Virus record (IMG/VR): IMGVR_UViG_3300027963_000035
Location: 124,001 to 188,000 of that record
Direction: 5' to 3' (one strand)
Length of the DNA: 64,000 nucleotides
In this document: piece after piece, positions 23,517-57,969 of the stretch
How the letters are laid out: each line of letters opens with the position of its first letter
Position numbering within the stretch: the first letter of the stretch is position 1
Program-made: the position numbers and the translations under genes
Notes under the pieces: generated by a model
Told to the model about the DNA's origin: nothing
Seen by the model: the letters and a program-made list of their open reading frames with translations, nothing else
The model's database searches: none

Positions 23517-23762
23517 TCACTTCCAACCCTTCATTTCCTTGTTGGCAGCGGCCACGATACTTGCCTTGTTCCGGCGAGACTTCAACTCTTTCTTAGTCTT
23601 GGGAACACAAGCACCGTTCTGACGGAGATACTTGAGACGGAGGCAAACCGCTGCCGGAGTGATTCCCAACTCCTTAGCAACACTGGTTTGGTTCCCACCA
23701 TTGTTGAGATGCCGCATGATGACATTGACGAACGTTTCAACGCTAACAGTCTGACGCTTCAT
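23517..23762 (-). CDS. small sigma-region-4-like HTH protein (paralog 1)
   Basis: VSVETFV..GGNQTSVAKELGITPAAVCLRLKYLR; motif at 23811. Confidence 0.75.
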   Translation of the reverse strand: MKRQTVSVETFVNVIMRHLNNGGNQTSVAKELGITPAAVCLRLKYLRQNGACVPKTKKELKSRRNKASIVAAANKEMKGWK

Positions 23763-23935
23763 GGTTTTGGTTCCTTATGGTTATGGTTATGGTTCAATCA
23801 ACGATAATCTACCGTACTAGTTTTCTTCTTCCGTTGGATCATAGTTACATTCATCCTCTGCATCTTCATTGTCATAACTTGGATCGTCAATCCAAGGCCA
23901 GAGGACTGTTTCTTGCATCATATCAAAGTCATCCA

Positions 23936-24124
23936 TTAGACTCTCCTTTGAGTGTTGGGTTCACAACCATCCACCGTACTGAATACTTCAACAGCGACCA
24001 GATGGGGAAGGTATCCTTTCAGAATCTCTTTGAACTCAACCTTGCCGAACTTTTCGACCGCCTCTTTATGAGTCAAGACTATTGTTTTACCCGTGTCACA
24101 ACAGGTTACTTCATACTTCTTCAT
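23936..24124 (-). CDS. hypothetical protein
   Basis: RBS and motif at 24157; reads through the motif at 23973. Confidence 0.6.
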   Translation of the reverse strand: MKKYEVTCCDTGKTIVLTHKEAVEKFGKVEFKEILKGYLPHLVAVEVFSTVDGCEPNTQRRV

Positions 24125-24171
24125 GATGAAACTCCCAGAGTTATCGGCAAGAGTTTACCGTACCGAAAGCC

Positions 24172-24384
24172 TCAGATGACCCCCTCCAAGTAGGATTCAA
24201 ACTGGACAAGCAGTTCAATCTTATTATTCTTAGGCTTGATTCCCTTTTCCTGAAGGATTCTTTTCACAATCTGGCTGACGTTGAACCTTGAGTGCTTGAG
24301 TCCCTTAGTCTCCAACTTCAATGCACTCTTGAGACTGAGCAGACGATACTTTTCAACATTCAGGCCAGTGATAACGGTAGTCAT
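24172..24384 (-). CDS. hypothetical protein
   Basis: Start MTTVITG after GAGGA; motif at 24418. Confidence 0.65.
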   Translation of the reverse strand: MTTVITGLNVEKYRLLSLKSALKLETKGLKHSRFNVSQIVKRILQEKGIKPKNNKIELLVQFESYLEGVI

Positions 24385-24434
24385 TTTTAGTCCTCTTTGT
24401 TGATGGAACAAGAGTTTACCGTACCTGATTCATT

Positions 24435-24656
24435 TCAACCAAGATAACGATACTTAGCGTCCTCAACCTTTTCATCAATATTGTAGACGGTCAAACCGAT
24501 GATGTTATGGTCGTTCCACAAAGTTTCAAAAAGATGACTAATCTTTTTGCGGTCAGTATTCTTGATATAACCCTTTTTACCGTCCTTGAACATGATCTCC
24601 AGAATATAACCACTGACCCAAGACAAACCATCGAACCACTTGATGTTCTTGAACAT
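24435..24656 (-). CDS. hypothetical protein
   Basis: Start MFKNIK after AAGGA; motif at 24694. Confidence 0.6.
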   Translation of the reverse strand: MFKNIKWFDGLSWVSGYILEIMFKDGKKGYIKNTDRKKISHLFETLWNDHNIIGLTVYNIDEKVEDAKYRYLG

Positions 24657-24691
24657 TGTTTTTTCCTTTGGGCTAGGGTTAAGACAAGAGT

Positions 24692-24901
24692 TTACCGTAC
24701 TGGATTCCAAAGATTATCTTCCCTGAGTTCCTTACGGAGCAGGGTTGCTTCCTCCAGCAACTTCCTCTGTTCAATGAGGAAGTTCTTTACTGCGGAGTCA
24801 TACTCCCCACTATTTTGGGTATCCAGAATATTCTTCTTAGTCTCCCAAATAAGAGTGCTAAGAGCCCGGTCGATGATGTTTTTTTGCTCTGGGGTCATCA
24901 C
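24692..24901 (-). CDS. hypothetical protein
   Basis: AGGAG RBS, motif at 24922; ends VR-stop inside the next motif. Confidence 0.6.
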   Translation of the reverse strand: MMTPEQKNIIDRALSTLIWETKKNILDTQNSGEYDSAVKNFLIEQRKLLEEATLLRKELREDNLWNPVR

Positions 24902-25219
24902 TTTTCTCCTTTTGGTTTTTTACCGTACCAAAAACATAAAGTTTAACCCTAGATTTAACTAGGGTTGTTGCTTTTAACACTAGCCAGTTCACCGTATAGG
25001 TTAACTGCAAGATACAGTGCTTCTCTCTTGTTAGCAGCCCATACATACCCGACAACGCCGACTCGCCAGTAAACTTCCCATTCAGTAAGCATGGTATTGG
25101 CTCCGTGGTTAATGGTTCACACCCAATCTACGTACCAAAAACTAAAAAGAAAAATCCCCCGATCATAATGAAAACTCTACGCTTAGCGTGGAATCACCAA
25201 TATGATCGGGGGAGAGTCT

Positions 25220-25624
25220 TTATTCTGCCCCTAGTGCCACTTTCACGGCATTGACCATTTGACCATAGAAACTACCGGCAAAGTTGCCCCCACACATTTC
25301 TGCTAGTTCCCGCTGAAATGCGGTTGGGGTCATTCCGCCCTTACGATTACCCTCTCTGTAGACCGTAGCCTTAGCCTTTACTTTCACAAAGTCCAGTTTG
25401 TGATTCTGACGCTCTACGGTGCGATCTGGAGCCGTAATACTAAAAGTGCCTCTTCCGGCCCGATTAGTATAAACAACCCGCCAGACTTGATCCTCGCTCG
25501 CCTTGGAGTGTCGGATGGTTCCCTTTACCATCAAGCCACCAACACGGCGAAACTCTGTGCCGTTTTCTGTCTCAAAAGGATAGAACTTGATTGGCTTGGG
25601 TTCATCAACGATTTGCCACGGCAT
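25220..25624 (-). CDS. hypothetical protein
   Basis: 134 aa, AAGGA RBS, motif at 25661, long hairpin downstream (25155-25213). Confidence 0.7.
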   Translation of the reverse strand: MPWQIVDEPKPIKFYPFETENGTEFRRVGGLMVKGTIRHSKASEDQVWRVVYTNRAGRGTFSITAPDRTVERQNHKLDFVKVKAKATVYREGNRKGGMTPTAFQRELAEMCGGNFAGSFYGQMVNAVKVALGAE

Positions 25625-25691
25625 TGTCTGATTCCTTAGTGGTGTTGGTTACAACTATAACCCGTACTAGATACTATCCCCGTAGGGATCA

Positions 25692-25907
25692 TCAACCCGT
25701 GATGACACTCAGCACTTCATCGTTGAGCGGGTTGATTACCGGATCGAACTCGACCGGAACTTCAACTTCACGCTGATTCTGGATGATGTTGACAATCGCA
25801 TTGACCAGAACCCGCTCGTTGACAGTGTAGTGACCCCGATTGTGAATCTCCTTTGAGGCTTCCATGTCCTTGAGCAACTTCAGGCGACGAGTCTTAGTAA
25901 CTTTCAT
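25692..25907 (-). CDS. hypothetical protein
   Basis: AGGAG RBS, motif at about 25943. Confidence 0.65.
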   Translation of the reverse strand: MKVTKTRRLKLLKDMEASKEIHNRGHYTVNERVLVNAIVNIIQNQREVEVPVEFDPVINPLNDEVLSVITG

Positions 25908-25955
25908 CTCTAACTCCTGAGAAGTGGAGGGAACAACACTAACCCGTACCGGATT

Positions 25956-26234
25956 CTAGTCATGCCTCTTGATTCGATAGTTCATGCCGCCCTCGACCAG
26001 CAGATTCCATCCGTAGGAATCCAATGAATCAATCAACTCCTCAAATACAAGACGATCCGGCAGGAGTGATAACATGATCTTCGGTCCATTGACCTTGCCG
26101 ATGAGCCAGTGTACCGCCCGTTCACGGTCGAATGCCGCCACCCTTTCGGGGTCGAACCGATGGATGAAGGTGCATGGGAACGGCTCTTCTCCGAACCGCT
26201 GAACCAGATCATCAATAGTGGTTTCTAACGCCAT
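25956..26234 (-). CDS. hypothetical protein
   Basis: AAGGA RBS, motif at 26266. Confidence 0.65.
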   Translation of the reverse strand: MALETTIDDLVQRFGEEPFPCTFIHRFDPERVAAFDRERAVHWLIGKVNGPKIMLSLLPDRLVFEELIDSLDSYGWNLLVEGGMNYRIKRHD

Positions 26235-26278
26235 GATTTCCTTTCGTTTCGGGTAACAACTCCCGACCGTACCGGATT

Positions 26279-26479
26279 CTAGTTGATTTCTAGAATATCT
26301 ACCCTCAAACCATCCTTATGGTAACTCTCACCCCTAGAATATCGGGGGAGGGTTGAATGAGTTACTGACGGGTCAAACTTAATAATCCAATCGTCCGCAC
26401 AACCCACTGCATCATAGTAGTTGTCGAAACTGGTAACACTCTCAGGAACACTGTCACGAATGACCATTGCAAGCCACAT
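26279..26479 (-). CDS. hypothetical protein
   Basis: AGGAG RBS, motif at 26502. Confidence 0.65.
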   Translation of the reverse strand: MWLAMVIRDSVPESVTSFDNYYDAVGCADDWIIKFDPSVTHSTLPRYSRGESYHKDGLRVDILEIN

Positions 26480-26515
26480 TTGGATTCTCCTTTGAAGTTT
26501 TACCGTACCAAATCT

Positions 26516-26722
26516 TTATGATTTGAACTGTCGGTCTTTGCTCATAATCCTGTTAACGGCAGCCCAACTCCACTGAAAACTCTTTGGGCCGTTCAACTGA
26601 GCCACAGTAGGAAACTTCTCAAGGAAGCCCACGATTTTAGCGGGCTCCCCATCAAGCCAGCAAGCATTGTCGTTCTTCCACTGTTCAACAGCAAACTCAT
26701 GATCCTCGATTGTGCTTCTCAT
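26516..26722 (-). CDS. hypothetical protein
   Basis: AGGA RBS, motif at 26769. Confidence 0.65.
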   Translation of the reverse strand: MRSTIEDHEFAVEQWKNDNACWLDGEPAKIVGFLEKFPTVAQLNGPKSFQWSWAAVNRIMSKDRQFKS

Positions 26723-26780
26723 TTTTAATCCTAGTTATTAAAAGTAAAAGTAAGGCTCACAAGTCTTTACCGTACCAAAA

Positions 26781-26827
26781 TCGACCGCTAGGATTGAACC
26801 TAGTGAATCCCCAAACGGGACGGTCGA
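26781..26827 (-). ncRNA. truncated tRNA-like element (acceptor stem, one hairpin, T arm)
   Basis: TCGACCG TCCC GTTTG GGGA TTCA CTAGG TTCAAT CCTAG CGGTCGA. Confidence 0.45.
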
Positions 26828-26990
26828 AGATTGTTTAGCGTGGGTTGTTATTATCAATGATAATAGAAATAATACCGCTACACAATCCAAGGAAGCACAT
26901 CATTTGAAGACTCTTCAGGTATTCACAACCAGTCAGATTCCCGGCTTCGACCAGGAACCAGAAACCGTACCCATGGGAAACCCCGTGGGC

Positions 26991-27026
26991 CTCACCCCCC
27001 GGCCTATTGTTTGGCCGGGGGGTGAG
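26991..27026 (-). terminator. 14-bp GC hairpin after HTH paralog
   Basis: ctcaccccccggcc / ggccggggggtgag. Confidence 0.65.
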
Positions 27027-27037
27027 TGTGACTAACT

Positions 27038-27298
27038 TCAGAGCATCTCGACGCCAAGGCTGGCGAGAATCTCCGTCGCACGCTCCTTGGTATTGCTGGT
27101 GCGACCACCACCCTCAAACTTCGGGATATTCAGCCCGTGCTTCTTCCGCAACTGGCTCAGACGCACCGACACCGAACCCGGAACGATGCCCAACTTGCTT
27201 GCAACGTCCTCGACGCTGCCACCAGCCCGCTGCACTTCGATAACCGTGGTGAGAAACGTCTCAAGATCAACACCCTTCTGACCAACTTGGCGACCCAT
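27038..27298 (-). CDS. small sigma-region-4-like HTH protein (paralog 2)
   Basis: MGRQVGQKG..GGSVEDVASKLGIVPGSVSVRLSQLRKK; AGGAG RBS; motif at 27377. Confidence 0.8.
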   Translation of the reverse strand: MGRQVGQKGVDLETFLTTVIEVQRAGGSVEDVASKLGIVPGSVSVRLSQLRKKHGLNIPKFEGGGRTSNTKERATEILASLGVEML

Positions 27299-27396
27299 AG
27301 TAATCATCTCCTGCTTATAGTTACCAACCCTTTGGTTCCCGCTTGCCTCATTGGCTTGCTGTCGGAACAAACCCTAACCGTACCGAATCTTATCCT

Positions 27397-27660
27397 TTAC
27401 CGATTATGACAACGGAAACCGTCTCTCCGTGTCATATTTGCTTCAATCTCCCTAAAAAGATCCCTCATAGCCAGATAGTTCTTAAACTCTGGCTCCTTTT
27501 CAAACTGTGTAGCGGCTTCGATAAGGCTTGAAACCGGCTTCACAGTCTCCCTTGCGTAATAATCTTCAAGGAAACCAAGAGTGTATCGGTCAAGACCACT
27601 ACTGGTTTTTGTATCGTCTGGCATTTTTTCTCTCCAGAAACCGTAAAAACTGTTTTCCAT
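27397..27660 (-). CDS. hypothetical protein (predicted leaderless)
   Basis: ATG 8 nt after TACGGA. Confidence 0.65.
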   Translation of the reverse strand: MENSFYGFWREKMPDDTKTSSGLDRYTLGFLEDYYARETVKPVSSLIEAATQFEKEPEFKNYLAMRDLFREIEANMTRRDGFRCHNR

Positions 27661-27871
27661 ATCTCTGCTCCGTACTAAAAACTAATCTTCGGGGTGAGGG
27701 CCGGGAACACCGTTGAAAAACGGGTTTGGCATCCAAACATCATAATCAGTTAAAATCCATTGACGTTCTGGATGTTCGGCCCCAACATGAAGTGCGTATT
27801 CCCGCATTGCATCAATAGGTTTTGCAAGTTCATCTGGCATCAATCGTCTCCTTTTTTATTGGAACGATAGT

Positions 27872-28078: not shown

Positions 28079-28123
28079 TGTTATTCTCCTCTGGTTGATA
28101 ACTGTACCTGATCTTACCTGATC

Positions 28124-31142: not shown

Positions 31143-31187
31143 TATTTTCCTTTTGTATTGATATACCGGCTGAGAATGGATCGACTT

Positions 31188-31266
31188 ATGGAACGATGGG
31201 ATTTGAACCCATAACTCCTCTTGCTTTTAAAGCAAGTGGAACTCTATCCAGTTGAGTTACGCTCCA
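31188..31266 (-). tRNA. atypical tRNA-like RNA with elongated anticodon arm (loop UU UAA AA)
   Basis: TGGAGCG/CGTTCCA acceptor, ACTC/GAGT D stem, ATGGG TTCAAAT CCCAT T arm; anticodon arm 23 nt instead of 17. Confidence 0.7.
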
Positions 31267-31516
31267 CGATAGTTTCACAAATAGTGTCCGGTATCACGCA
31301 CTATTCAACCTTATTTAGGTTTCTATCCGACCCCTGACGCATTTATATTGAATCTGTGCCGGGAATCCAACCCGGATAGAGAGCAGCATAAGCCTCACCA
31401 TAGCCTAGTTCGGCAACCCCATACACCCATTAGATGCAGACGCTGTTTGCTGGGCTATCTCTCTACTGTCGGCAGACACACAGTTTGTATCTCGTTGACT
31501 CCACACCGTACCAAAA

Positions 31517-32011: not shown

Positions 32012-32023
32012 GTTGTTTAAAAG

Positions 32024-32095
32024 TACCCCGTGCCGGTAACGCTCCGGCGTCCCTGAGATGAAAGCCCAGTATACTAACTTCTATACGAACGGGGC
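32024..32095 (-). tRNA. trnE: tRNA-Glu(UUC)
   Basis: GCCCCGT/ACGGGGT acceptor, CTGGG CT TTC AT CTCAG anticodon arm, T loop AGCGTTA; motif 10 nt upstream. Confidence 0.85.
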
Positions 32096-32136: not shown

Positions 32137-32174
32137 ATAAAAAATAAACCCCCTCCGTTTTACGGGAGGGGGTT
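32137..32174 (-). terminator. intrinsic terminator after HTH paralog
   Basis: aaccccctccg / cgggagggggtt hairpin with T-rich tail on the minus strand. Confidence 0.7.
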
Positions 32175-32206
32175 CGTATGGCCGATTATTATATCAGCCT
32201 TTAACT

Positions 32207-32461
32207 TCAACCAACCCCAAGGCTGGCGAGAATCTCAGCCGCCCGCTCTGCGGTGTTGCTGGTGCGGCCCGACCCCTCGAACCGGGGGACGTTCACACCG
32301 TGCTTCTTCCGCAGTTGCGAGAGACGCACCGACACCGAACCGGCCGTGATGCCCAGAGCATCGGCAACGTCCTGCACCGAACCGCCGGCCCGCTGCGTCT
32401 CGACCACCGTGGTCAGGAACTTCTCCAGAGCGACACCCTTCTGTCCAACTTGACGACCCAT
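32207..32461 (-). CDS. small sigma-region-4-like HTH protein (paralog 3)
   Basis: GGSVQDVADALGITAGSVSVRLSQLRKK; very GC-rich codons; motif at 32535. Confidence 0.8.
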   Translation of the reverse strand: MGRQVGQKGVALEKFLTTVVETQRAGGSVQDVADALGITAGSVSVRLSQLRKKHGVNVPRFEGSGRTSNTAERAAEILASLGVG

Positions 32462-32571
32462 AGTAGTAATCTCCTGCGTTATTCAACCCTTTGTTGCCGT
32501 TTGCCGAAGTGGCTCACCGTCGCAACGTCCATCAACCGTACCAAAAGACAAGTTTCTCTGTTTATTTCTTT

Positions 32572-33441: not shown

Positions 33442-33654
33442 TTATTTAGCAGACCTGTATTCAACCTGAATAGTAGAATTTCTACTAACCATCTTCACAA
33501 AATTTGAAACACTTTCCCAATCAGGACTAGAGTCAATATACAACTCTTTTTCAGACCCGGGGAAGGCACTCAGTAAATATATTTCAAAACCACCGGAAGG
33601 ATACTCACCATCAACATATGGTTTATTTGTATTGATTACAATGTATTGTTTCAT
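33442..33654 (-). CDS. hypothetical protein
   Basis: ATGA overlap with the upstream gene. Confidence 0.6.
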   Translation of the reverse strand: MKQYIVINTNKPYVDGEYPSGGFEIYLLSAFPGSEKELYIDSSPDWESVSNFVKMVSRNSTIQVEYRSAK

Positions 33655-34004
33655 TCAAAACTTTTCAACAGTACCACATTTGGAAAGTAGTTCCAAACAT
33701 TACTGGGGTATTCTGAACTATTGTTTAATATGGGCTCGCCACTAATATACCAGTTGAAATCTTTCTGGTAAATATTTCTACCTTCACAAAATTTACGAAG
33801 GATACAATTAAGCCGGCTCTTGGTAACATATGTAGTGTATCCCTGATTATTAATCCCTACAGTCTTGTTGGTAATTTTAGCAATCAGGTTATTAAACAAA
33901 AAGACAAGAATCACATCATCGGCAACTTCAACCCTAGTGTTGCCACAAGAATGATTCTTCTTGTTCAAGATGCTATCAATCATCTCTTGTTCAATCTTAC
34001 GCAT
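33651..34004 (-). CDS. conserved phage protein
   Basis: MRKIEQEM...GNT.V...G..T..TKSRLN pattern; motif at 34038. Confidence 0.7.
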   Translation of the reverse strand: MRKIEQEMIDSILNKKNHSCGNTRVEVADDVILVFLFNNLIAKITNKTVGINNQGYTTYVTKSRLNCILRKFCEGRNIYQKDFNWYISGEPILNNSSEYPSNVWNYFPNVVLLKSFE

Positions 34005-34127
34005 CTTCTTCCTCAAGAGGGAGGTCGGGAAACTCCAACCGTACCAGAAACTATGTGGTTGAGAGAATGATTTAATGCGTTGATTGGTATATATAATACA
34101 TATAACCAAAAATCAAAAGGAGTATAT

Positions 34128-34595
34128 ATGAATAGCTGTAAATATTGCAATAGAACTATAAACAATAAAGGCTCTCTTGCATCTCATGAATTATGTTGTC
34201 AAAATAATCCCAAAAGAGTCAAAAGAATAAAATCACCAAAAGCAGGTGTTCAAAAAGGTTGCATACCTTGGAACAAAGGCAAAAAATTTGATGAAATAAC
34301 CTCCGCCAGTTTAAAAGAAAAAATAGAAAGTGGACAATATAAAACGTTTTGTGAATATCATGCTCGTAAATTAATAAAAAAATACTTAATACAAACACAT
34401 GGACATAAGTGTATAATGTGCGGATTATCGGAATGGCTAGGAGTCAGAATTCCCTTAGTTTGTGATCATATAGATGGTAATGCTGAAAATCATGATTTAT
34501 CTAACATGAGAATTATATGTAATAATTGCGATTCAATAACTGCAACTTTTAAAGGAAGAAACAGAGGCAAAGGAAGGAAAAATAGATATAAATAA
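34128..34595 (+). CDS. HNH endonuclease
   Basis: CIMCG..W....PL..DHIDGN..N....N.R.ICNNCD. Confidence 0.85.
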   Translation: MNSCKYCNRTINNKGSLASHELCCQNNPKRVKRIKSPKAGVQKGCIPWNKGKKFDEITSASLKEKIESGQYKTFCEYHARKLIKKYLIQTHGHKCIMCGLSEWLGVRIPLVCDHIDGNAENHDLSNMRIICNNCDSITATFKGRNRGKGRKNRYK

Positions 34596-34664
34596 AGTTT
34601 AGAATAGTATATACCTATAGATTAACAATGACGTTAATCATGTTTTTTTAAAAGGAGTTTTATT

Positions 34665-35120
34665 ATGAGTGCAACAACATCACAAGGCACAGGTTTAGGA
34701 ATGGCCCCTAACCAAGTTTGTTTAACAGCCGCTGGCCCTCACATTGTCGCTGCTGGCATTGCCAGAACAGGAACTGTAGGATCAGACGGACAAACTAACA
34801 ATTGGTGGATCACAGTTGATTTAGAAGAAGTATTACCTTTAAATCCAGATATGTATAGTGTTATACTAACACAATGCGACGAAGAAGGTGCTTTACAAGG
34901 CGAGAATGGTCAAAGACCAAACCACGGCCCTCACGTTGAAAAATACGTTAAGGTCAATGGAACTCGTTATAACAAGTATGGTATTGACGATGAGTTCGAT
35001 AACTATGATAACTGGAAGAACAATGGTTTAGCTGGTTTCGTTATTCACTCAGGTGACGGCGATCCACACACCATGCAATACGTTGTAGTAAGAAATGGTT
35101 TCTTAAGACTAAGTAACTAA
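34665..35120 (+). CDS. hypothetical protein, possibly structural
   Basis: AAGGAG RBS, followed by a terminator. Confidence 0.7.
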   Translation: MSATTSQGTGLGMAPNQVCLTAAGPHIVAAGIARTGTVGSDGQTNNWWITVDLEEVLPLNPDMYSVILTQCDEEGALQGENGQRPNHGPHVEKYVKVNGTRYNKYGIDDEFDNYDNWKNNGLAGFVIHSGDGDPHTMQYVVVRNGFLRLSN

Positions 35121-35178: not shown

Positions 35179-35407
35179 ATTGTACCAAACCCTTTTGTAT
35201 CTGCCAATTCTTATGCTCCATAACAACGTCGATATTATTACGAAGTAGATTATCAGGAGCAGTATCACAATACAAACTAATCATCTCGAGAATATCGTCT
35301 AAACTATTCTTGAGAATATTATCTTGAGTTAAACTCTTTGAATAAGAAAGTTTACTGGCGATCTTGCAAAAGAGTATGGCCTGTTCCTTATCCATAAGAT
35401 TCACCAT
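35177..35407 (-). CDS. hypothetical protein
   Basis: 76 aa, coupled to HTH paralog 4. Confidence 0.55.
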   Translation of the reverse strand: MVNLMDKEQAILFCKIASKLSYSKSLTQDNILKNSLDDILEMISLYCDTAPDNLLRNNIDVVMEHKNWQIQKGLVQ

Positions 35408-35631
35408 TGTGGCACAGGGGCTCCCTTAGCCCGGAGTTTATGACAACGCTGCCTTACTGCTTGAGGAGAGATCCCCAATTCATTTGCAACACTAATACTG
35501 TTTCCGCCATTCTTAACGGCTTCTACAATACTCTTGAGGAAAACGTCAAGGGGGATTCTCTTATTCTTCTTCTGAGTGGCTTCAGTTTCACCACCAAGAA
35601 TGAAATCACTAAAGTCAATATCGTCTAGCAT
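35401..35631 (-). CDS. small sigma-region-4-like HTH protein (paralog 4)
   Basis: IPLDVFL..GGNSISVANELGISPQAVRQRCHKLR; motif at 35659. Confidence 0.75.
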   Translation of the reverse strand: MLDDIDFSDFILGGETEATQKKNKRIPLDVFLKSIVEAVKNGGNSISVANELGISPQAVRQRCHKLRAKGAPVPQW

Positions 35632-35847
35632 CTAGAGTTCTCCGTGTGACACCCTCACACCGTACCAGATTCTACCGTTCTCTCTACCCAGATTTCACAA
35701 CCAAACTTCATTCTGGCGAATCTATTTGCGTCCCATTCGCTATAAGCAGATACATACCCTGCTATTCGGTTGTTCTTCCAAACAATCCAAGTATATTTTT
35801 CCATAATACCTCTATTATAATCTAATAGAGGATATTGGTCAATACAT

Positions 35848-36809: not shown

Positions 36810-37421
36810 ATGGATCCTGCTTCAAAATACCCAAATCAATATGATTTATGTTCCTGTGGTAAACACAAAACAATCTTGTCTAAACATTGTATCAAATGCT
36901 GCAATAATGGTCAAATAAAATATCTAACAATCAAAGATGCGATGGTATCAGCACTGCATGGACAAAGTGCAAAATTTAATGTTGTCAGAAACAGAGCCAG
37001 GGTTCAATATAGGAATATAAAGTGTCAATTTTGCGGATACGATAAACACGTTGAAGTTTGTCACATTAAACCAATCCACTCATTCCCAGAAGAAACTTTA
37101 ATATCTGAGGTGAATGACCAGTCTAATATTTTAATTCTTTGTCCCAATTGTCATTGGGAGTTTGACAAAAAGAATCAAAAACCTAGAAAAGAAAAAATAA
37201 AAAAACAAAGACCAAGGAAGGTTGAATGGCCCACAAAAGAATTACTAAAAAAACTTGTATGGGAAATGCCAACCATTCAAATTGCTAAACAATATGGAGT
37301 ATCTGATAAAGCTGTTGGTAAATGGGTAAAGAAATATAATCTAACCAAACCACCAAGAGGATATTGGAGAAAAAACAAAGAGTGCGACCCCTGGGAATCG
37401 AACCCAGAACCCCAAAATTAA
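36810..37421 (+). CDS. HNH endonuclease with C-terminal HTH
   Basis: CQFCGY...VEVCHIKPI...N...LCPNCHWEFD; IAKQYGVSDKAVGKW. Confidence 0.9.
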   Translation: MDPASKYPNQYDLCSCGKHKTILSKHCIKCCNNGQIKYLTIKDAMVSALHGQSAKFNVVRNRARVQYRNIKCQFCGYDKHVEVCHIKPIHSFPEETLISEVNDQSNILILCPNCHWEFDKKNQKPRKEKIKKQRPRKVEWPTKELLKKLVWEMPTIQIAKQYGVSDKAVGKWVKKYNLTKPPRGYWRKNKECDPWESNPEPQN

Positions 37422-37455
37422 AAGTTTCGTGCTCTGCCAATTGAGCTAGGGTCGC
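37383..37455 (-). tRNA. trnK: tRNA-Lys(UUU)
   Basis: GCGACCC/GGGTCGC acceptor, GCTC/GAGC D stem, CT TTT AA loop, CTGGG TTCGATT CCCAG. Confidence 0.92.
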
Positions 37456-37511
37456 CCGACTTAATCAACAACAAAACACTACCGTACCAGAAACAAACTT
37501 TTCGTCAACCC

Positions 37512-37543
37512 CTCCCCTCCCCCACATTAAAGGGGGAGGGGAG
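37512..37543 (-). terminator. GC hairpin after HTH paralog
   Basis: ctcccctccccc / gggggaggggag. Confidence 0.65.
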
Positions 37544-37556
37544 AAGATTAAATCCT

Positions 37557-37811
37557 TCACTCAACCCCAAGCGAGGCAAGGATAGCCGCTGCCCGTTCAG
37601 CGGTGTTGCTAGTCCGACCACCACCCTCAAAGCGGGGGATATTCAGACCATGCTTCTTCCGCAACTGCGAAAGACGCACCGAAACCGAACCGGCCACAAT
37701 GCCCAGTTCGTTCGCAACATCTTCAACACTACCGCCAGCCCGCTGCGTCTCGATGACACAGGTGAGGAAACGCTCCAGCGACACACCAGCCTGACCCTTA
37801 GCACGACCCAT
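37557..37811 (-). CDS. small sigma-region-4-like HTH protein (paralog 5)
   Basis: MGRAKGQAG..GGSVEDVANELGIVAGSVSVRLSQLRKK; motif at 37877. Confidence 0.8.
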   Translation of the reverse strand: MGRAKGQAGVSLERFLTCVIETQRAGGSVEDVANELGIVAGSVSVRLSQLRKKHGLNIPRFEGGGRTSNTAERAAAILASLGVE

Positions 37812-37894
37812 AGTATTAAACTCCCTCTTTAACAACCCTTTCTTCCAGACTCACGTTGAATCGGGAACAACCACCAACCGTACCAAAAGGAAAC

Positions 37895-53216: not shown

Positions 53217-53358
53217 TATTTGTCAAGATATTCTTCTATATAAATTTCTGCTAATTTATTATTAATTTCTTCCAATTCATAACAATACATTATTTCCGAC
53301 ATTGCAACGTATTCGCTATACAGATCTTGTTCTTCAATGTGAATCTCGTCTTTCATTT

Positions 53359-54282
53359 TTACTCCTTTAAATGCTGTTTGAATAGAGAGGTGAATCTTGA
53401 ATTTTGCAAAAATTGTGGTGCTAACGCATGAATTTCATTCTTATCATCTTTGTCTATGAATTTATTTACGATATCTTCTGTTGTTTTTTCTAAGTCAAAA
53501 TCTATAATTTTATCAAAAGTGTTTGCGAATTCTTGATGTGCAAAACATTTTACTTTTGTGTTATTATCTGAGTGACAAGACATAGATGATACATGCCAAC
53601 CAATTGGTGAGTAAATAATGCTAATGTCTTGGATAGGGGCCCTGTATGAATTATACACCATGTGATTTTGATCTTGATCATCGAATCTAAAATCTGCCGG
53701 GGTGATATGACTTAAGTAAAAATAATCATCATGCTTATTTATATTCCTGTAGTCGTGTATATTGATTTTTTGTAAATTTTCAAAAGAAGTTACAAAGCCT
53801 TTGTGCCATGAATTCGATAACGGATCATCTAAAATAGTGAATCTAAAATCATAGTATGATAAATAATTTATGCAATTTAGATTGTCGATTTTGTTTAAAG
53901 AATCTATATTTTGAATCTCATCAATATCCTGGGTGCAAATTAAATCTCCTTCTTTGGCAATCTGCAGTATTGCATTTTGTAAATAGTTTCTATGGTAAAA
54001 TTCAACTATCCAACGATTTTCTTTTGCCTTGAAATTATTATGTCCTAAAAAATTACCCTTGTATGGTTTTGGTAAATTTTCGAGTTTAACATATAAGATC
54101 CTATCTTCATATTTTTTAAATATGTCTTTATATTTTTCATAGAAAAAGGGCTTACTTAAACCGCTAAAAGTAGAATTTGCTTCGGCTAAAATTATAAAAT
54201 CAAAGTATTTTAAGTCATACTCCAGTCTAGCCTCCAGGAGCCAGACCTCATTATTCATTATTAAGCAATTATATTTTTTCAT
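53359..54282 (-). CDS. glycosyltransferase family 17-like
   Basis: NE..LLE.RL, AEAN.TFSG..KP, E..HRN, DIDEI, GWH.S. Confidence 0.8.
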   Translation of the reverse strand: MKKYNCLIMNNEVWLLEARLEYDLKYFDFIILAEANSTFSGLSKPFFYEKYKDIFKKYEDRILYVKLENLPKPYKGNFLGHNNFKAKENRWIVEFYHRNYLQNAILQIAKEGDLICTQDIDEIQNIDSLNKIDNLNCINYLSYYDFRFTILDDPLSNSWHKGFVTSFENLQKINIHDYRNINKHDDYFYLSHITPADFRFDDQDQNHMVYNSYRAPIQDISIIYSPIGWHVSSMSCHSDNNTKVKCFAHQEFANTFDKIIDFDLEKTTEDIVNKFIDKDDKNEIHALAPQFLQNSRFTSLFKQHLKE

Positions 54283-54659
54283 TGTTTCATATTGAAATGA
54301 AAATCATTAGTATCATTGTCGAAACTGCAGTCTAACACATCTTCTCTTGCCATAATATTCAATATATTATTTACACCTCTTTGGAAAAGATCATTAGCTA
54401 TTTTCTCTGCTGTTTTTTCATCATCGCTTATGATTAGTAGATCATTTTTCTTTTTGCAGAAGGCTCTCATAATTAGAACAGTTTCTTCAAGCATTAAAAA
54501 CGAGTCTAATTTGCTTTTTTCAAGATATTCTTGAACCTTTCCAACTAAATCCTTAGCCTTTCTTCCTGATTTTATTTGTTTTATCATATTTCTATGAATA
54601 TTTTTTCTTATTTTATTTGCCGCTAGCACTAAATCATCTTCTGTCATTTCTATTTTCAT
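54279..54659 (-). CDS. hypothetical protein (paralog of 10317..10646)
   Basis: Shared C-terminal motif. Confidence 0.65.
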   Translation of the reverse strand: MKIEMTEDDLVLAANKIRKNIHRNMIKQIKSGRKAKDLVGKVQEYLEKSKLDSFLMLEETVLIMRAFCKKKNDLLIISDDEKTAEKIANDLFQRGVNNILNIMAREDVLDCSFDNDTNDFHFNMKQ

Positions 54660-54755
54660 GATTCTTGGTTATATCATGGATCATAAAAAAAGAAAACACC
54701 CACAGGATTTTACTCCCATGGGTGCATTTATAATCTAAATTATAAATTAAAAATA

Positions 54756-54968
54756 TCAGTCAGCGATAAAACCTGGGGTAACTGTTAGTGCATCATTTGT
54801 TGAAAAACCGGCTCCGTCCTTAACAACAACAACGATTTCTTCTTGTGTTGAAATCATGTTGAGTGTTCTTTGTAGACTAACGCCTCCATAAACACTGGAA
54901 TCTAAGCAACCTTCGGTTGTGTATCCGTCATTTGGAGTAACATAGAGCTTAGCAATGTAATCGTTCAT
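54756..54968 (-). CDS. hypothetical protein
   Basis: AGGAGG RBS, downstream hairpin. Confidence 0.65.
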   Translation of the reverse strand: MNDYIAKLYVTPNDGYTTEGCLDSSVYGGVSLQRTLNMISTQEEIVVVVKDGAGFSTNDALTVTPGFIAD

Positions 54969-55068
54969 AAATAAACCTCCTTGTAATTGGATGGATTATT
55001 CCATCCAATATTATATATGCTTGCTATAAATGATTTTTATTCCTTACTAGTTGAAACTATATTATTTC

Positions 55069-55761
55069 ATGTCAAATCTGGCATTTCATCATATTTACGC
55101 ACCGTCAGAGAGAAGTCTAGGGGTGATAAAGCCTATACTAGAAAGAACTGTTAATTCTGGGATTTTAGATAGACTTGATTATTTTAATATAATCATAACT
55201 GGCGTTTCTAGAGAGTTTGTAGCAAACAATATCAGAGGAATTTCTCCCAAGTTCACTATAAACCTAACAGATGAAAACCTAGCAGAAAGAACCACCCTTC
55301 ATAAACTATATTTGACGGCTAAGCCCGAGGATAAAGTATTATACTTTCACTCAAAAGGAACAAGTAAGATCAACAATCCCTTTTTAAAGTCATGGACTGA
55401 CAAACTGATATATTTCGTTATAGATAAACACCAAGAATGCCTAGATTTTTTAAATGAATACGACTTAGTTGGCCCAAATTATTGGGGAGAGTTCACTCCG
55501 GATAGTTGTAGAATAAGTTGTGATTTAGACGATAATCCACCGCCCCATTATTCTGGAAATTTCTGGTGGGCTAAAGGATCCCATATTAAGAGATTAGATA
55601 TACCAATAGGACCAGATTATAACGACCCAGAGTTTTGGGTTTTTACAAAGAGGCCTTTAAAGGCAGTTGCCATGAGCGTTATAGTAACTAATCCCTATAC
55701 CGATAGGCATGATTTTGAAAGTTATAAGGATGAGAAACCTAGATTTTCTTTGTTAAATTAA
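55069..55761 (+). CDS. putative glycan-modifying protein (GT-A-like)
   Basis: E..TL, LYFHSKG, HYSGNFWWA motifs. Confidence 0.6.
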   Translation: MSNLAFHHIYAPSERSLGVIKPILERTVNSGILDRLDYFNIIITGVSREFVANNIRGISPKFTINLTDENLAERTTLHKLYLTAKPEDKVLYFHSKGTSKINNPFLKSWTDKLIYFVIDKHQECLDFLNEYDLVGPNYWGEFTPDSCRISCDLDDNPPPHYSGNFWWAKGSHIKRLDIPIGPDYNDPEFWVFTKRPLKAVAMSVIVTNPYTDRHDFESYKDEKPRFSLLN

Positions 55762-55764
55762 CAA

Positions 55765-56352
55765 TTAAAATGGATGCTTGTCATACCAATTTCTTCCAAC
55801 ATATTTAAATTCTTTTTTCTCGCAACATTCAATATACTTTTTAAGACCATATTTATCTCCAGATTCTTCAAAACTTGAAAGGATAAGCATTCTGTGAATA
55901 CTATCTGGGAATTTGTCCCCGATTATCTCGCAAGCATAGCGATATGCAAAGTCGTAATTTTTGAGGAAAACGCCTTCATGTTCTTCTGGTATTCTGGACT
56001 TTAGAACACTACGAGCATAGCAGTATGATAGGCGGGGATCATTGTAGATCTTCTTATCAAGTCTTTTCTGCAACTTTTCGTCTTGAACTTTATGATTTCC
56101 GGTGTGCTGAAAATAAGAAAAAAGATAATGAATGTTTTTGCTCAGAACCTTCTCAATCTCAGGAGAGGCTTTATCCCCTTTTTCAAGAAACACTTTTAGA
56201 TACTTATAGGCAAGTGCTGGACTGGTGCAGAAATAATCATCAAGTTCTTTGGTTCTGTCGATATTATCTTTAAAATACCAAAGAACATTCCTTACCAAAT
56301 GATTGCGAAGGTGCTTATTATCCGTCAAATCAAGATCAAATTTAAGTTTCAT
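55765..56352 (-). CDS. helical repeat protein
   Basis: About 24-aa P..(A/S)Y.YA..(V/I)...R/K.P..E repeats. Confidence 0.7.
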   Translation of the reverse strand: MKLKFDLDLTDNKHLRNHLVRNVLWYFKDNIDRTKELDDYFCTSPALAYKYLKVFLEKGDKASPEIEKVLSKNIHYLFSYFQHTGNHKVQDEKLQKRLDKKIYNDPRLSYCYARSVLKSRIPEEHEGVFLKNYDFAYRYACEIIGDKFPDSIHRMLILSSFEESGDKYGLKKYIECCEKKEFKYVGRNWYDKHPF

Positions 56353-56355
56353 TTT

Positions 56356-56946
56356 TTATTCAACAAAAGAAAGAACTGGGATTTGAAGTTTAATCATTTC
56401 TTGGGCATATTTTCTTGAAAGTTCACCGTATTCTACCAACTTACTCTCTGCCTCATGCCAGCGGCCCTTAATAACTTCACTGGCATAAGGAAGAATGAGT
56501 GTTGGAACCTGCATTATAAAGGGCTCTGCTTCTTCCCACCTGCCCCCAATTATAGATGCGGCATAAAGAGCGGCCAGTTTAACATCTTTTCCTCTACGAG
56601 CAGAATCTAAGATTGCTTGCTCTCCCATTTTAAATCGACCACCAATAATGTCTAGAGCATACTCATAAGAACTTTTGGCATCTTTTGAAATTACAGGTTC
56701 GCCAAGTTTAAAACGGCCCTCTAATACTTTTTTAGCATAGTTCAAAGAGCAAACAGGGTCTTTGGAAATACTTTCCTCTCCTTCTTTAAAACTATCGCCT
56801 TGCGAGGCTTTAAGATGGATGGCATAAGACACACTCGATTCTGGTGAAATCGCTATCAGTTTTTCAAGTTCGGGATGCCTTCCCTTCTTAATTGCAATAT
56901 CATATGCTTCAAAGGCAAATACCCTATCAATTTGATCGCACATCAC
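56356..56946 (-). CDS. helical repeat protein
   Basis: YA..(V/I)(L/I).GR(F/W)..(G/A)E..I repeats. Confidence 0.75.
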   Translation of the reverse strand: MMCDQIDRVFAFEAYDIAIKKGRHPELEKLIAISPESSVSYAIHLKASQGDSFKEGEESISKDPVCSLNYAKKVLEGRFKLGEPVISKDAKSSYEYALDIIGGRFKMGEQAILDSARRGKDVKLAALYAASIIGGRWEEAEPFIMQVPTLILPYASEVIKGRWHEAESKLVEYGELSRKYAQEMIKLQIPVLSFVE

Positions 56947-57404
56947 TTGTTCCTTTCATACTGACGCTTGCTATCGTGCCAATCATATATTTGCTTTTCA
57001 CTAACCTCCATCCCATAGGCCATAAGTAAGCCCTTCAACTTCTTGCTGATACTGTTCTTTTTATTGATCATTTGATAATAATTGGCTTCCCCATCGCAAC
57101 TCAAATTTTCGGGACTAAGTTCTCCATAGCAACAAAGAACAGCCTCAAGAATCAAATTATCAACATGGGTGAATGGATTATATTTAATTTCCTTCTCAAC
57201 AACCGTCCCATTATCATCGACCATTTGGAGCAGAGGATAAGGAACAGTCCAAATCGTACCTGCATCATGCTTATATCCACGACTTTCGGTTGTTCTAACC
57301 TTGGCTTTAGTTGGATTTACTTTAACTACTACTCCACGAGTTTTCTCGCCATTGCCACTACCGAAAATAACATTCATACCAACACGACATTCTTCACGAT
57401 TCAT
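56943..57404 (-). CDS. conserved phage protein, SH3-like N-terminal domain
   Basis: G.VVKVN.TKAKV...W.VP; LSPENLSCDGE. Confidence 0.7.
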   Translation of the reverse strand: MNREECRVGMNVIFGSGNGEKTRGVVVKVNPTKAKVRTTESRGYKHDAGTIWTVPYPLLQMVDDNGTVVEKEIKYNPFTHVDNLILEAVLCCYGELSPENLSCDGEANYYQMINKKNSISKKLKGLLMAYGMEVSEKQIYDWHDSKRQYERNK

Positions 57405-57636
57405 TTTATATCCCCTTATAGTGTATAATCAGATCGAAAACTATTATGAAAATAAAACGCAGCATTAGGGATCGGAGTATTATTAGTCCAAAGATGCAAG
57501 AAGCATTTTTTCATAGGCTCTGTCATCTCTGTGTATTCTGTCATATATTCCATTCGGATATAAGACAAGAGATTAGAATAATAATCTTCCAACATATAAG
57601 ACGGAATCTTATCTTCCATGATATATCTCCCTATTA

Positions 57637-57969
57637 TTACTGGTTGATGCCGAGTTTAGCGAGAATAGCAGCCGCCTCAACAGCAGTATCGCTAGAACGG
57701 TTATCAATCTTAGGAAGCGTTGGGACTGTTTCCCTCAACTTATTGACCCTGCTATAGACGGCACTATTGGTGACGCCAAGTTCCTTGGCAACATCAGAAT
57801 AGTCGCCGCCGTTACCAAAAACTGCATTGATGGTATGAATAAACTGATTCAGACTAACCTTGTAATTACGGCCGCTGGTCTTAGCCTTGGGGCTATAGAA
57901 GTTAGATTCAGGCTTAAAATCAACGTCACGACAGCCAGTAGAAAGATTCAGACCATACTGGATTTCCAT
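57637..57969 (-). CDS. small sigma-region-4-like HTH protein (paralog 6)
   Basis: VSLNQFI..GGDYSDVAKELGVTNSAVYSRVNKLR..EAAAILAKLG; motif at 58036. Confidence 0.75.
   Translation of the reverse strand: MEIQYGLNLSTGCRDVDFKPESNFYSPKAKTSGRNYKVSLNQFIHTINAVFGNGGDYSDVAKELGVTNSAVYSRVNKLRETVPTLPKIDNRSSDTAVEAAAILAKLGINQ

What the first reader, a model, noticed from the sequence alone, without database searches (positions are those of the whole stretch)
23517..57969. Six stand-alone sigma-region-4-like HTH paralogs, each under the motif: candidate cognate regulator or RNAP-hijacking family
Seen: genes 23517-23762, 27038-27298, 32207-32461, 35401-35631, 37557-37811 and 57637-57969 share (V/I)xLxxF...GG(S/N/D)xxxVAxxLG(I/V)xxx(S/A)VxxRxxxLR. 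Three are highly similar and spaced about 5.2 kb apart. Each is the first gene after a motif copy, four are followed by their own strong GC hairpin, and the three close copies are far more GC-rich than the genome. Established: the pattern resembles sigma region 4.2 / ECF HTH (S..EIA..LG...GTV.SRL.R.R), and phages redirect host RNAP through sigma4-targeting factors (T4 AsiA/MotA). Inference: these are highly expressed sigma4 mimics that bind the motif, occupy the beta-flap or block host -35 elements. Planctomycetes are rich in ECF sigmas, so divergent paralogs could target different sigma or anti-sigma partners.
Basis: partly seen in the sequence, partly recalled or inferred. Interest (0 to 1): 0.85.

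Follow-up and report, generated by a model that had tools for sequence, protein, structure and literature searches.

The report
Six early phage HTH DNA-binding paralogs
An uncultured jumbo phage carries six real, selection-maintained copies of a small, undescribed helix-turn-helix DNA-binding protein, each built as a strongly expressed early gene cassette, but nothing tested links them specifically to sigma factor region 4, to RNA polymerase hijacking or to the promoter motif.

Summary
Six minus-strand genes form one protein family. Three share 81% identity, have 58-65% GC against 36% for the window, and sit 5.2-5.35 kb apart. All six follow a copy of the GGTACGGT motif, and four are followed by strong GC hairpins. 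They are true coding genes (dN/dS about 0.2).

The proteins are a basic arm, a three-helix HTH, a conserved G-x-x-P turn and a C-terminal helix. Sigma region 4 matches are sub-threshold and no better than about 15 other HTH families. The best sequence match to a solved structure is an AsnC/Lrp-type HTH, and no sigma factor is among the top 50 fold matches.

The motif is the phage's general early promoter, by inference. There are 48 GTACGG cores on one strand and none on the other. A pyrimidine-purine start signature lies 8-9 nt downstream, and eight ATGs sit exactly there. It precedes 63% of neighbouring genes and two tRNAs, so lying under it is not special.

The distinctive features are long leaders with 5' hairpins, rare strong 3' hairpins, and avoidance of the codons read by the phage's own tRNAs. 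Four orthogroups are conserved across related phages. Relatives exist in which 5-13 modules are fused in one protein.

Most likely these are abundant immediate-early DNA-binding regulators. It is an undescribed family of a known kind.

The parts
23517..23762 (-). HTH paralog of orthogroup II, 81 aa, 50% GC
   Evidence: Translation and alignment. Profile hit E 1e-36. Orthologs L003_13406, P0044, P0120.
27038..27298 (-). HTH paralog of orthogroup I, copy 1, 86 aa, 58% GC
   Evidence: dN/dS 0.17-0.18 against the other two copies. Positional ortholog L003_11137. The Shine-Dalgarno spacing favours the ATG at 27298 over the one at 27307.
32207..32461 (-). HTH paralog of orthogroup I, copy 2, 84 aa, 65% GC; this protein was modelled
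   Evidence: AlphaFold2 pLDDT 75: helices 12-24, 29-36, 40-54 and 70-81, disordered 55-69.
35401..35631 (-). HTH paralog of orthogroup III, 76 aa, acidic D-x-D-F N-terminus, no C-terminal helix
   Evidence: Orthologs in L003, L006 and L010. Its stop overlaps the start of the next gene, and there is no terminator hairpin.
37557..37811 (-). HTH paralog of orthogroup I, copy 3, 84 aa, 59% GC
   Evidence: Positional ortholog L003_1543.
57637..57969 (-). HTH paralog of orthogroup IV, 110 aa, long N-terminal extension
   Evidence: Orthologs P0037, P0042, L006_5744.
23811..23818 (-). promoter core (variant AGTACGGT) of gene 23517; predicted start at 23802
27377..27384 (-). promoter core GGTACGGT of gene 27038; predicted start at 27368
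32535..32542 (-). promoter core of gene 32207; predicted start at 32526
35659..35666 (-). promoter core of gene 35401; predicted start at 35650
37877..37884 (-). promoter core of gene 37557; predicted start at 37868
58036..58043 (-). promoter core of gene 57637; predicted start at 58027
32493..32526 (-). 5'-terminal leader stem-loop that begins at the predicted +1. Equivalent elements lie at about 27335-27368, 37843-37867 and 57995-58027. In the three orthogroup I leaders it is followed by a conserved A(A/G)GGGTTG and the Shine-Dalgarno sequence.
   Evidence: In the alignment of eight orthogroup I leaders the stem starts at column 17, the ninth nt after the motif. One pair switches CG to GC in 4 of 8 sequences. 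Single-sequence folds.
23474..23513 (-). GC-rich 3' hairpin after gene 23517
   Evidence: -31 to -37 kcal/mol.
26969..27026 (-). double GC-rich 3' hairpin after gene 27038, with no T-run
   Evidence: -48 kcal/mol.
32146..32199 (-). two 3' hairpins after gene 32207, the second followed by a T-run; then a motif copy and tRNA-Glu
   Evidence: -32 kcal/mol.
37505..37552 (-). GC-rich 3' hairpin after gene 37557; then a motif copy and tRNA-Lys
   Evidence: -35 kcal/mol.

Best explanation
The six genes encode an undescribed family of small (76-110 aa), mostly basic, stand-alone DNA-binding proteins. Their parts are a short basic arm (often G-R-x-x-G), a three-helix HTH closest to winged-helix AsnC/HTH_24/HTH_11-like domains, an invariant G-x-x-P turn and, in most members, a C-terminal amphipathic helix.

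Five of the six are autonomous early cassettes; the orthogroup III gene (35401) has only the promoter. A full cassette has the clade's general early promoter (tttY-GGTACGGT-N8-purine start), a 5'-terminal stem-loop and long leader (four of the six; the 23517 leader is unstructured), a Shine-Dalgarno site, a GC3-rich reading frame that avoids the codons served by the phage's own tRNAs, and a strong 3' hairpin (four of the six).

I infer that they are made in large amounts immediately after infection from host-type codons. I also infer that they bind DNA through the arm and recognition helix. The four conserved orthogroups would have different target sequences. They would act as early regulators or organisers of transcription on phage or host DNA, not as sigma region 4 mimics.

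Shown: family membership, coding selection, the HTH fold, the cassette anatomy, the codon bias and conservation across related phages. Inferred: promoter function and start site, high early expression, DNA binding, and distinct specificities.
For: - **Family and selection:** the family is real and under purifying selection.
- **Fold:** the model is a three-helix HTH plus a C-terminal helix at pLDDT 75, and a deeper alignment gives the same model. The best profile match to a solved structure is the LrpA HTH, E 2e-4.
- **N-terminal arm:** a basic G-R-x-x-G arm recurs in distant members.
- **Orthogroups:** four orthogroups have 95-100% support and are each conserved across phages. They differ at recognition-helix positions: GSVSVRLSQ, AAVCLRLKY, QAVRQRCHK and SAVYSRVNK.
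- **Promoter reading of the motif:**
  - GTACGG occurs 48 times on the minus strand and never on the plus strand.
  - Position +8 after the motif is a pyrimidine in 42 of 47 copies, and +9 is a purine in 42 of 47 (p 4.5e-8). An ATG sits exactly at +9 in eight copies.
  - The motif also precedes tRNA-Glu and tRNA-Lys.
  - The layout matches AR9/phiKZ early promoters, motif-(6N)-G+1 (PMC5312081).
- **Expression signals:**
  - Family leaders are longer than those of other early genes (27-73 nt against a median of 28; Mann-Whitney p 0.002).
  - Four of about ten strong hairpins follow family genes (Fisher p 3e-4, using an estimated, not counted, figure of about 100 other genes).
  - The leader stem begins at the predicted +1.
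  - Orthogroup I uses AAA 0 of 13, TTA 0 of 24, ACA 0 of 16 and AGA 0 of 21. Large ORFs prefer exactly these codons, and the phage tRNAs read AAA, UUA, ACA and GAA.
- **Conservation:** the same cassette design and two to six paralogs occur in each divergent relative.
Against: - No DNA-binding data exist, and no operator candidate was found. The only over-represented non-coding word in the window is the promoter itself.
- All domain-library matches are below curated thresholds, and all fold matches have E above 0.07. The HTH subclass is therefore not fixed.
- The C-terminal helix and the acidic N-termini of orthogroups III and IV could be protein-interaction surfaces.
- The host, the expression timing and the polymerase that reads the motif are all unknown.
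Confidence: 0.45

Rival explanations
1. Cognate motif binders. One or more paralogs bind the GGTACGGT core or the variable element just upstream of it (GAWTCY, GTTTCCYTYY, or TTACAACAT in a relative). They would act as feedback repressors that shut off early promoters, or as promoter-class specificity adaptors for the polymerase.
For: - The motif is the only over-represented non-coding word in the window.
- Family and motif co-occur in every related locus inspected.
- At least two upstream flavours exist and they segregate along the genome.
- The relative L008 has a different upstream element and a paralog set dominated by a group absent from the window.
- The genes are early products, so feedback repression is logically possible.
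Against: - The motif precedes 63% of the other early genes and two tRNAs, so the family's position is not special.
- The core is invariant while the orthogroups differ in the recognition helix.
- An activator made from the promoters it activates is circular unless it is packaged in the virion.
- The co-occurrence is confounded, because all these loci belong to one clade.
- A distant member lies in an operon with no motif.
- The upstream-element and paralog correlation rests on three or four phages.
Confidence: 0.15
2. Abundant architectural proteins. The proteins assemble head-to-tail along DNA, imitating the tandem-array relatives. They would coat or organise phage or host DNA, for host shut-off, genome protection or compaction, rather than act at a few operators.
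For: - Exhaustive profile search: the top hits are single proteins with 5-13 tandem copies of the same module.
- hhalign of the family against one array module gives 98% probability (E 3e-13). The alignment runs through the G-V-x-x-P linker and pairs the stand-alone C-terminal helix with helix 1 of the next module.
- The gene triplication, high-expression design and codon bias suggest a need for dosage.
Against: - Four orthogroups with distinct recognition helices, conserved across phages, point to specific rather than generic binding.
- Orthogroup III lacks the C-terminal helix.
- No oligomer prediction or data are available.
- The array proteins themselves are uncharacterised.
Confidence: 0.2
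3. One reading: sigma region 4 mimics or appropriators. The proteins occupy the beta-flap, titrate anti-sigma or sigma partners, or block host -35 elements, in the manner of T4 AsiA and MotA.
For: - Weak sub-threshold matches to the sigma 4.2 HTH in most paralogs: Sigma70_r4_2 E 0.002-0.26 in five of six, and TIGR02937 E 0.003-0.08 in four of six.
- Two sigma-like entries appear among weak viral fold matches, at ranks 8 and 27, with E about 0.2-0.4.
- Early expression fits a takeover role.
Against: - All sigma matches are below threshold and no better than many unrelated HTH families.
- The best match to a solved structure is AsnC-type, and no sigma factor is in the top 50 PDB fold matches.
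- No PHROG match to MotA, AsiA or any appropriator was found.
- The module also occurs in long tandem arrays on mobile elements, which is hard to reconcile with flap binding.
Confidence: 0.08

Closest known systems
Winged-helix HTH of the AsnC/Lrp, BirA and HTH_24/HTH_11 type
   Same: The best sequence match to a solved structure is the LrpA HTH (E 2e-4), over the segment A-x-x-L-G-I-x-x-x-A-V-x-x-R-x-x-x-L-x-x-x-G-(V/I). Fold matches include AsnC/Lrp, DeoR and LysR DNA-binding domains, the last being an HTH plus a following helix. The tandem-array relatives score strongly on HTH_24, HTH_11 and HTH_AsnC-type.
   Different: The window proteins stay below every curated cut-off. No wing beta-hairpin is predicted; instead there is a G-x-x-P turn and a disordered linker. 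There is no ligand-binding or oligomerisation domain. The proteins are stand-alone and 76-110 aa long.
Sigma-70 region 4 / ECF sigma 4.2
   Same: Both are short HTHs with a similar A-x-x-L-G-(I/V)-x-x-x-(S/T)-V-x-x-R pattern. Weak profile matches align to the 4.2 HTH.
   Different: Scores are below threshold. No region 2 or 4.1 is present. No structural preference for sigma is seen. Flap binding could not be tested.
T4 MotA/AsiA sigma appropriation
   Same: These are also early phage proteins that retarget transcription.
   Different: No sequence or profile similarity was found. T4 middle promoters keep a host -10 element plus a MotA box at -30. Here the conserved element lies at -16 to -9, and the variable element abuts it.
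Uncharacterised tandem-HTH array proteins on mobile elements (for example P0074, 740 aa, 12 modules), and by analogy Sulfolobus Cbp1
   Same: The module is the same, including the R-x-x-G-V-x-(I/V)-P linker (hhalign 98%, E 3e-13). There are 1493 profile hits in all, and arrays of 5-13 modules top the list. One array also weakly matches the NCBIfam Cbp1 model, a multi-HTH protein that binds repeated DNA.
   Different: In the phage the modules are separate genes, each with its own promoter and terminator. The arrays are lysine/glutamate-rich and sit in about 28% GC DNA next to a resolvase, Mob_Pre and TnpV. Their function is unknown.
Early promoters of jumbo phages AR9 and phiKZ, read by the virion RNA polymerase (comparison for the motif, not for the proteins)
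   Same: A highly conserved, strand-specific element repeated dozens of times before early genes, with a fixed short spacer to a purine start. AR9 has AAATATATATTAT-(6N)-G+1 at 41 start sites (PMC5312081). Here it is tttY-GGTACGGT-(8N)-R, with 47 copies in 64 kb.
   Different: The core here is GC-rich rather than AT-rich. No RNA polymerase gene was found in the window or in the other sampled genome stretches. A host sigma reading TACGGT as a -10-like element is not excluded.

Membership tests
Sigma-70 region 4 (PF04545, PF08281, TIGR02937) | Profile score at or above the curated cut-off | tested here: not met
   Best Sigma70_r4_2 score is 18.0 bits against 25.7. Sigma70_r4 scores 12.1 against 24.1. 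TIGR02937 scores 17.1 against 42.9.
Sigma-70 region 4 (PF04545, PF08281, TIGR02937) | Part of a sigma architecture (regions 2 and 4.1-4.2), or a four-helix region 4 fold as the best structural match | tested here: not met
   The proteins are 76-110 aa with a three-helix HTH plus one C-terminal helix. No sigma factor is in the top 50 PDB fold matches. Sigma chains score E 0.05-0.17 against 2e-4 for LrpA.
Sigma-70 region 4 (PF04545, PF08281, TIGR02937) | Binds the RNAP beta-flap tip and a -35 element | not testable with these tools
   No multimer modelling or binding assay was available.
T4 AsiA/MotA-type sigma appropriators | Homology to AsiA, MotA or another described appropriator | tested here: not met
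   The PHROGs scan of all six proteins at E up to 1 lists only generic HTH, regulator, transposase and sigma families, all weak.
AsnC/Lrp-type or HTH_24/HTH_11 winged helix | Profile score at or above the curated cut-off | tested here: not met
   HTH_24 scores at most 17.1 bits against 21.9. HTH_11 scores 19.0 against 25. HTH_AsnC-type scores 18.4 against 27. The family profile does hit the LrpA HTH at E 2e-4 over 26 residues.
AsnC/Lrp-type or HTH_24/HTH_11 winged helix | Beta-hairpin wing after the recognition helix | tested here: inconclusive
   The model has no strands. Residues 55-69 have low confidence (pLDDT about 52).
Fis/NtrC HTH_8 | Profile score at or above the curated cut-off | tested here: not met
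   The best score is 20.6 bits against 22, in one of the six proteins. The others score 15 bits or less.
Protein-coding gene family under selection (as opposed to GC-rich RNA or a chance ORF) | Excess of synonymous change between paralogs | tested here: met
   dN/dS is 0.17-0.22 and dS is 0.87-1.2. There are 34-43 third-position differences against 11-17 at positions 1 and 2. No Rfam family lies under the genes.
Phage early promoter (for the motif) | Over-represented, strand-specific, upstream of genes and tRNAs, with a fixed distance to a start signature | tested here: met
   There are 33 exact copies against 0.4 expected, all on one strand. GTACGG occurs 48 times against 0. The pyrimidine-purine signature lies at +8/+9 in 42 of 47 copies, with eight ATGs at +9.
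Phage early promoter (for the motif) | Mapped transcription start and an identified polymerase | not testable with these tools
   No RNA data are available. No RNA polymerase or sigma gene was found in the window or the sampled loci.

The most novel reading that the evidence does not exclude
The paralogs could be minimal, HTH-only promoter-class adaptors. Each orthogroup would read one flavour of the variable element that abuts the invariant GGTACGGT core (GAWTCY, GTTTCCYTYY, TTACAACAT). It would then hand the polymerase on to, or shut it out from, that promoter class. A family of about 80-aa factors would thus set the temporal programme of a jumbo phage, a role normally played by full sigma factors or MotA-like activators.
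Probability: 0.1. Interest if true: 0.75.

Novelty: new member of a known kind. Interest (0 to 1): 0.38.

Why it matters
The family has no model in Pfam, NCBIfam or PHROGs and no representative in any cultured phage. Yet it has about 1500 relatives in metagenomic proteins, and it is kept in four orthogroups and two to six copies per sampled locus (six in this genome) in a clade of 250-330 kb phages. Its members are built as the most expression-optimised genes of the early region. They are therefore good first candidates for the proteins that set up this clade's infection programme.

The work also defines a compact early promoter with a predicted start site and leaderless genes. It gives a mechanistic reason for the odd GC content: early genes use host-type codons, and late genes use codons served by phage tRNAs. 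If the adaptor or head-to-tail polymer readings proved right, this would be a new way of building promoter specificity or DNA coating from single HTH modules.

Tried and rejected
- **GC-rich units as RNA genes or chance ORFs.** Rejected on dN/dS and third-position changes, and no Rfam hit lies under them.
- **Segmental 5.2-kb duplications.** Rejected, because only the 277-nt gene unit repeats.
- **Relatives in cultured phages.** Megablast of 18 kb and tblastn of three paralog types against 50,697 GenBank phage records gave nothing beyond chance-level HTH hits.
- **Host identification through bacterial genomes.**
  - The protein scan found no relative.
  - The 18-nt promoter pattern gave 80 single matches spread over unrelated taxa, consistent with chance (I estimate roughly 140 chance matches in a collection of that size). 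None of these loci carried more than three core copies, and none showed the dense one-strand clustering seen in the phage.
  - The Planctomycetes assignment could not be checked.
- **A polymerase or sigma gene.** I scanned 60 window ORFs and 82 ORFs of loci fetched by the promoter pattern, mostly from other parts of the same and a sister genome. None was found. RNA_pol_L and poly(A) polymerase hits turned up in this pooled scan. It also included two unrelated single-hit contigs (L022, a giant-virus contig, and L025). I attribute the two hits to L022, but the per-ORF source was not checked.
- **A second over-represented motif that could be an operator.** The only other enriched word is a 21-nt coding tandem repeat.
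- **A deeper alignment to sharpen the model.** It gave the same model and the same confidence.
- **Profile-based locus search with the six-sequence alignment.** It failed because no conserved stretch was long enough.
- **ESM Atlas.** The nearest clusters are unnamed viral proteins.
- **Literature search for the motif string.** It returned only unrelated aptamer and primer sequences.

Full report
**What is there**

The six ORFs lie on the minus strand at the stated coordinates and translate without stops. They align over an HTH core with 13 invariant columns. A profile built from them, run against all six-frame ORFs of the window, recovers exactly these six (E 1e-28 to 1e-40; the next ORF scores E 0.4).

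The three close copies (27038, 32207, 37557) are 81% identical in protein and only 72-75% identical in DNA. Differences concentrate at third codon positions (34-43, against 11-17 at positions 1 and 2). dN/dS is 0.17-0.22 and dS is about 0.9-1.2. They are therefore old duplicates kept by purifying selection, not RNA genes or recent copies. Only the roughly 277-nt gene unit is repeated, so the 5163 and 5350 nt spacing does not reflect segmental duplication.

**Source of the window**

The window is part of a 251-kb IMG/VR contig, and a 323-kb sister contig exists. No GenBank phage matches in DNA or carries the family. No bacterial genome or MAG carries it either. The host remains unknown.

**The motif**

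- GGTACGGT occurs 33 times, all on the minus strand, against 0.4 expected. The core GTACGG occurs 48 times on the minus strand and never on the plus strand.
- It precedes genes by 8-94 nt, and it also precedes tRNA-Glu and tRNA-Lys.
- Position +8 after the motif is a pyrimidine in 42 of 47 copies, and +9 is a purine in 42 of 47 (p 4.5e-8). An ATG sits exactly at +9 in eight copies.
- I infer a promoter of the form tttY-GGTACGGT-N8-R(+1), with several leaderless mRNAs.
- The layout parallels the AR9/phiKZ early promoters, a conserved element followed by 6 nt and a G start (PMC5312081).
- In the early region, 27 of 43 non-family genes have their own copy. The family's position under the motif is therefore expected by chance at about 0.1 (0.63 to the fifth power).
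- The element just upstream of the core comes in at least two flavours that segregate along the genome: GAWTCY or GATTTT at 22-31 kb, and GTTTCCYTYY at 34-63 kb. A divergent relative uses TTACAACAT.
- An 18-nt version of one flavour clusters in IMG/VR only in the window's contig and its sister contig; four other contigs gave single hits, probably by chance.

**What distinguishes the family genes**

- Their leaders are long: 27-73 nt between motif and ATG, against a median of 28 for the other early genes (p 0.002).
- In four of the six, the leader opens with a stem-loop that starts at the predicted +1. In an alignment of eight orthogroup I leaders the stem begins at column 17, the ninth nt after the motif, and one pair switches CG to GC.
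- Four of the six are followed by hairpins of -32 to -48 kcal/mol. Only nine regions that strong exist on this strand in 64 kb.
- The GC excess is largely a codon effect. The three orthogroup I genes use AAA 0 of 13, TTA 0 of 24, ACA 0 of 16 and AGA 0 of 21 times. Large, probably late, ORFs prefer exactly those codons, and other early genes are intermediate.
- The phage tRNAs read AAA, UUA, ACA and GAA. The simplest reading is that these genes are tuned to be translated from the host tRNA pool at once and at high level.

**The proteins**

- **Structure model.** AlphaFold2 with 51 or 62 homologs gives the same model (pLDDT 75). It has helices at 12-24, 29-36 and 40-54, a low-confidence linker holding the invariant G-x-x-P, and a helix at 70-81.
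- **Domain libraries.** Pfam, NCBIfam and PHROGs give only sub-threshold hits spread over many HTH families. Sigma70_r4_2 (at most 18.0 bits against 25.7) and TIGR02937 (at most 17.1 against 42.9) are among them but are not the best.
- **Solved structures by sequence.** The family profile hits AsnC-type LrpA (2e-4), P22 Cro (5e-3) and KorA (7e-3) ahead of sigma factors (0.05-0.17).
- **Fold comparison.** Foldseek finds nothing below E 0.1 in the PDB. The top 50 are LysR, DeoR, AsnC/Lrp and LuxR-type DNA-binding domains, with no sigma factor. The viral library gives an equally generic mix.
- **Conclusion.** RNAP binding could not be tested.

**Relatives**

- A word-indexed search finds 58 clusters, all metagenomic, on contigs of up to 330 kb.
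- Divergent relatives (L003, L006, L008, L010) each carry two to six paralogs. Almost all have a motif copy 15-73 nt upstream and a GC-rich hairpin downstream, and most (all but the orthogroup III members) have raised GC.
- A tree resolves four orthogroups with 95-100% support. Each is conserved across phages, and a fifth group is absent from the window. The three close copies have positional orthologs in L003.
- The orthogroups differ at recognition-helix positions while V43, R46, L50 and R51 stay fixed. This argues for different DNA targets, and against all of them reading one invariant 8-mer.
- The exhaustive profile search gives 1493 hits. Many are stand-alone 70-125 aa proteins with the same layout, often with a G-R-x-x-G arm.
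- One such distant member lies in an operon with no motif.
- The top hits are single proteins with 5-13 tandem copies of the module. One of these sits on a mobile element with a resolvase, Mob_Pre and TnpV.
- hhalign of the family against one such module gives 98% probability. The alignment runs through the G-V-x-x-P linker and pairs the family's C-terminal helix with helix 1 of the next module. This is a lead for head-to-tail assembly, not a demonstration.

**Mechanism**

Most likely (0.45), these are abundant immediate-early DNA-binding proteins with four specificity classes that regulate or organise transcription. The rivals are:

- architectural head-to-tail DNA coating (0.2);
- cognate binding of the promoter core or its upstream flavours, as repressors or adaptors (0.15);
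- sigma region 4 mimicry (0.08).

An activator role at the very promoters that express these genes is circular unless the proteins are packaged in the virion. Feedback repression is not excluded. No operator candidate other than the promoter is over-represented.

**Verdict**

This is an undescribed family within a well-known kind, the small phage HTH proteins. Its cassette design and array-forming relatives are noteworthy. Interest is moderate.

Noticed in passing
window 22363-62961, minus strand (47 copies): Promoter anatomy: tttY-GGTACGGT-N6-(T)Y-R. Position +8 is a pyrimidine and +9 a purine in 42 of 47 copies. An ATG lies exactly at +9 in eight copies (motif 5' ends at 22496, 27676, 29765, 31811, 32113, 36777, 38601, 38919), most of which imply leaderless mRNAs. 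The ATG after the 32113 copy lies just upstream of tRNA-Glu, so that one is probably not a start codon.
   Followed up: partly
window 22.4-31.5 kb against 34-63 kb; L008: The element abutting the promoter core comes in flavours that segregate along the genome: GAWTCY or GATTTT, and GTTTCCYTYY. Some of the first kind contain GANTC. A divergent relative uses TTACAACAT instead. These may be temporal promoter classes.
   Followed up: partly
window-wide; tRNAs at 20566-20638, 31187-31267, 32023-32095, 37382-37455 (all minus strand): Codon-usage gradient. The orthogroup I HTH genes avoid AAA, TTA, ACA and AGA completely. Other early genes are intermediate, and large ORFs prefer these codons. The four phage tRNAs read ACA, UUA, GAA and AAA. 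This suggests a host with higher GC, and early genes tuned to host tRNAs.
   Followed up: partly
window 20338-20530 (-): A group I intron (Rfam RF00028, 68.6 bits) lies just downstream of tRNA-Thr (20566-20638). An ORF with a weak HTH_23 match lies at 19622-20305 (+).
   Followed up: no
window 36810-37421 (+): An HNH_2 endonuclease ORF lies on the opposite strand within the early region. It overlaps the tRNA-Lys locus and sits next to HTH copy 37557, so it is probably a free-standing homing endonuclease. A second low-GC plus-strand island lies at 34080-35120.
   Followed up: partly
window 4465-4582 (-), inside ORF 3723-6947: Six exact copies of a 21-nt tandem repeat lie inside a 1074-aa protein with DUF5122 beta-propeller and fibronectin type III domains. 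It is a probable tail fibre or surface protein with a variable repeat.
   Followed up: no
window 22555-23028 (-) and 22501-22548: A 157-aa ORF with about 54% GC and no Pfam match is followed by one of the few strong GC hairpins (-28 kcal/mol). It is built like the HTH cassettes but is not a family member.
   Followed up: partly
L032 8001-10223 (P0074) and one search hits: Single proteins carry 5-13 tandem copies of the same HTH module plus a conserved C-terminal domain. One is encoded on a low-GC mobile element next to a resolvase, Mob_Pre and TnpV. This is an uncharacterised multi-HTH family.
   Followed up: partly
window 33651-34004 (-): A homolog of Pfam Kyano_Gp96 (E 4e-26), a family named from T4-like cyanophages. 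It is also present in the relative L010. It is the only hint at wider phage kinship found here.
   Followed up: no
window 35401-35631 and 57637-57969 (N-termini): Orthogroups III and IV share an acidic-hydrophobic D-(I/V)-D-F segment ahead of the basic arm. It is conserved in their orthologs and could be a short protein-interaction motif.
   Followed up: no
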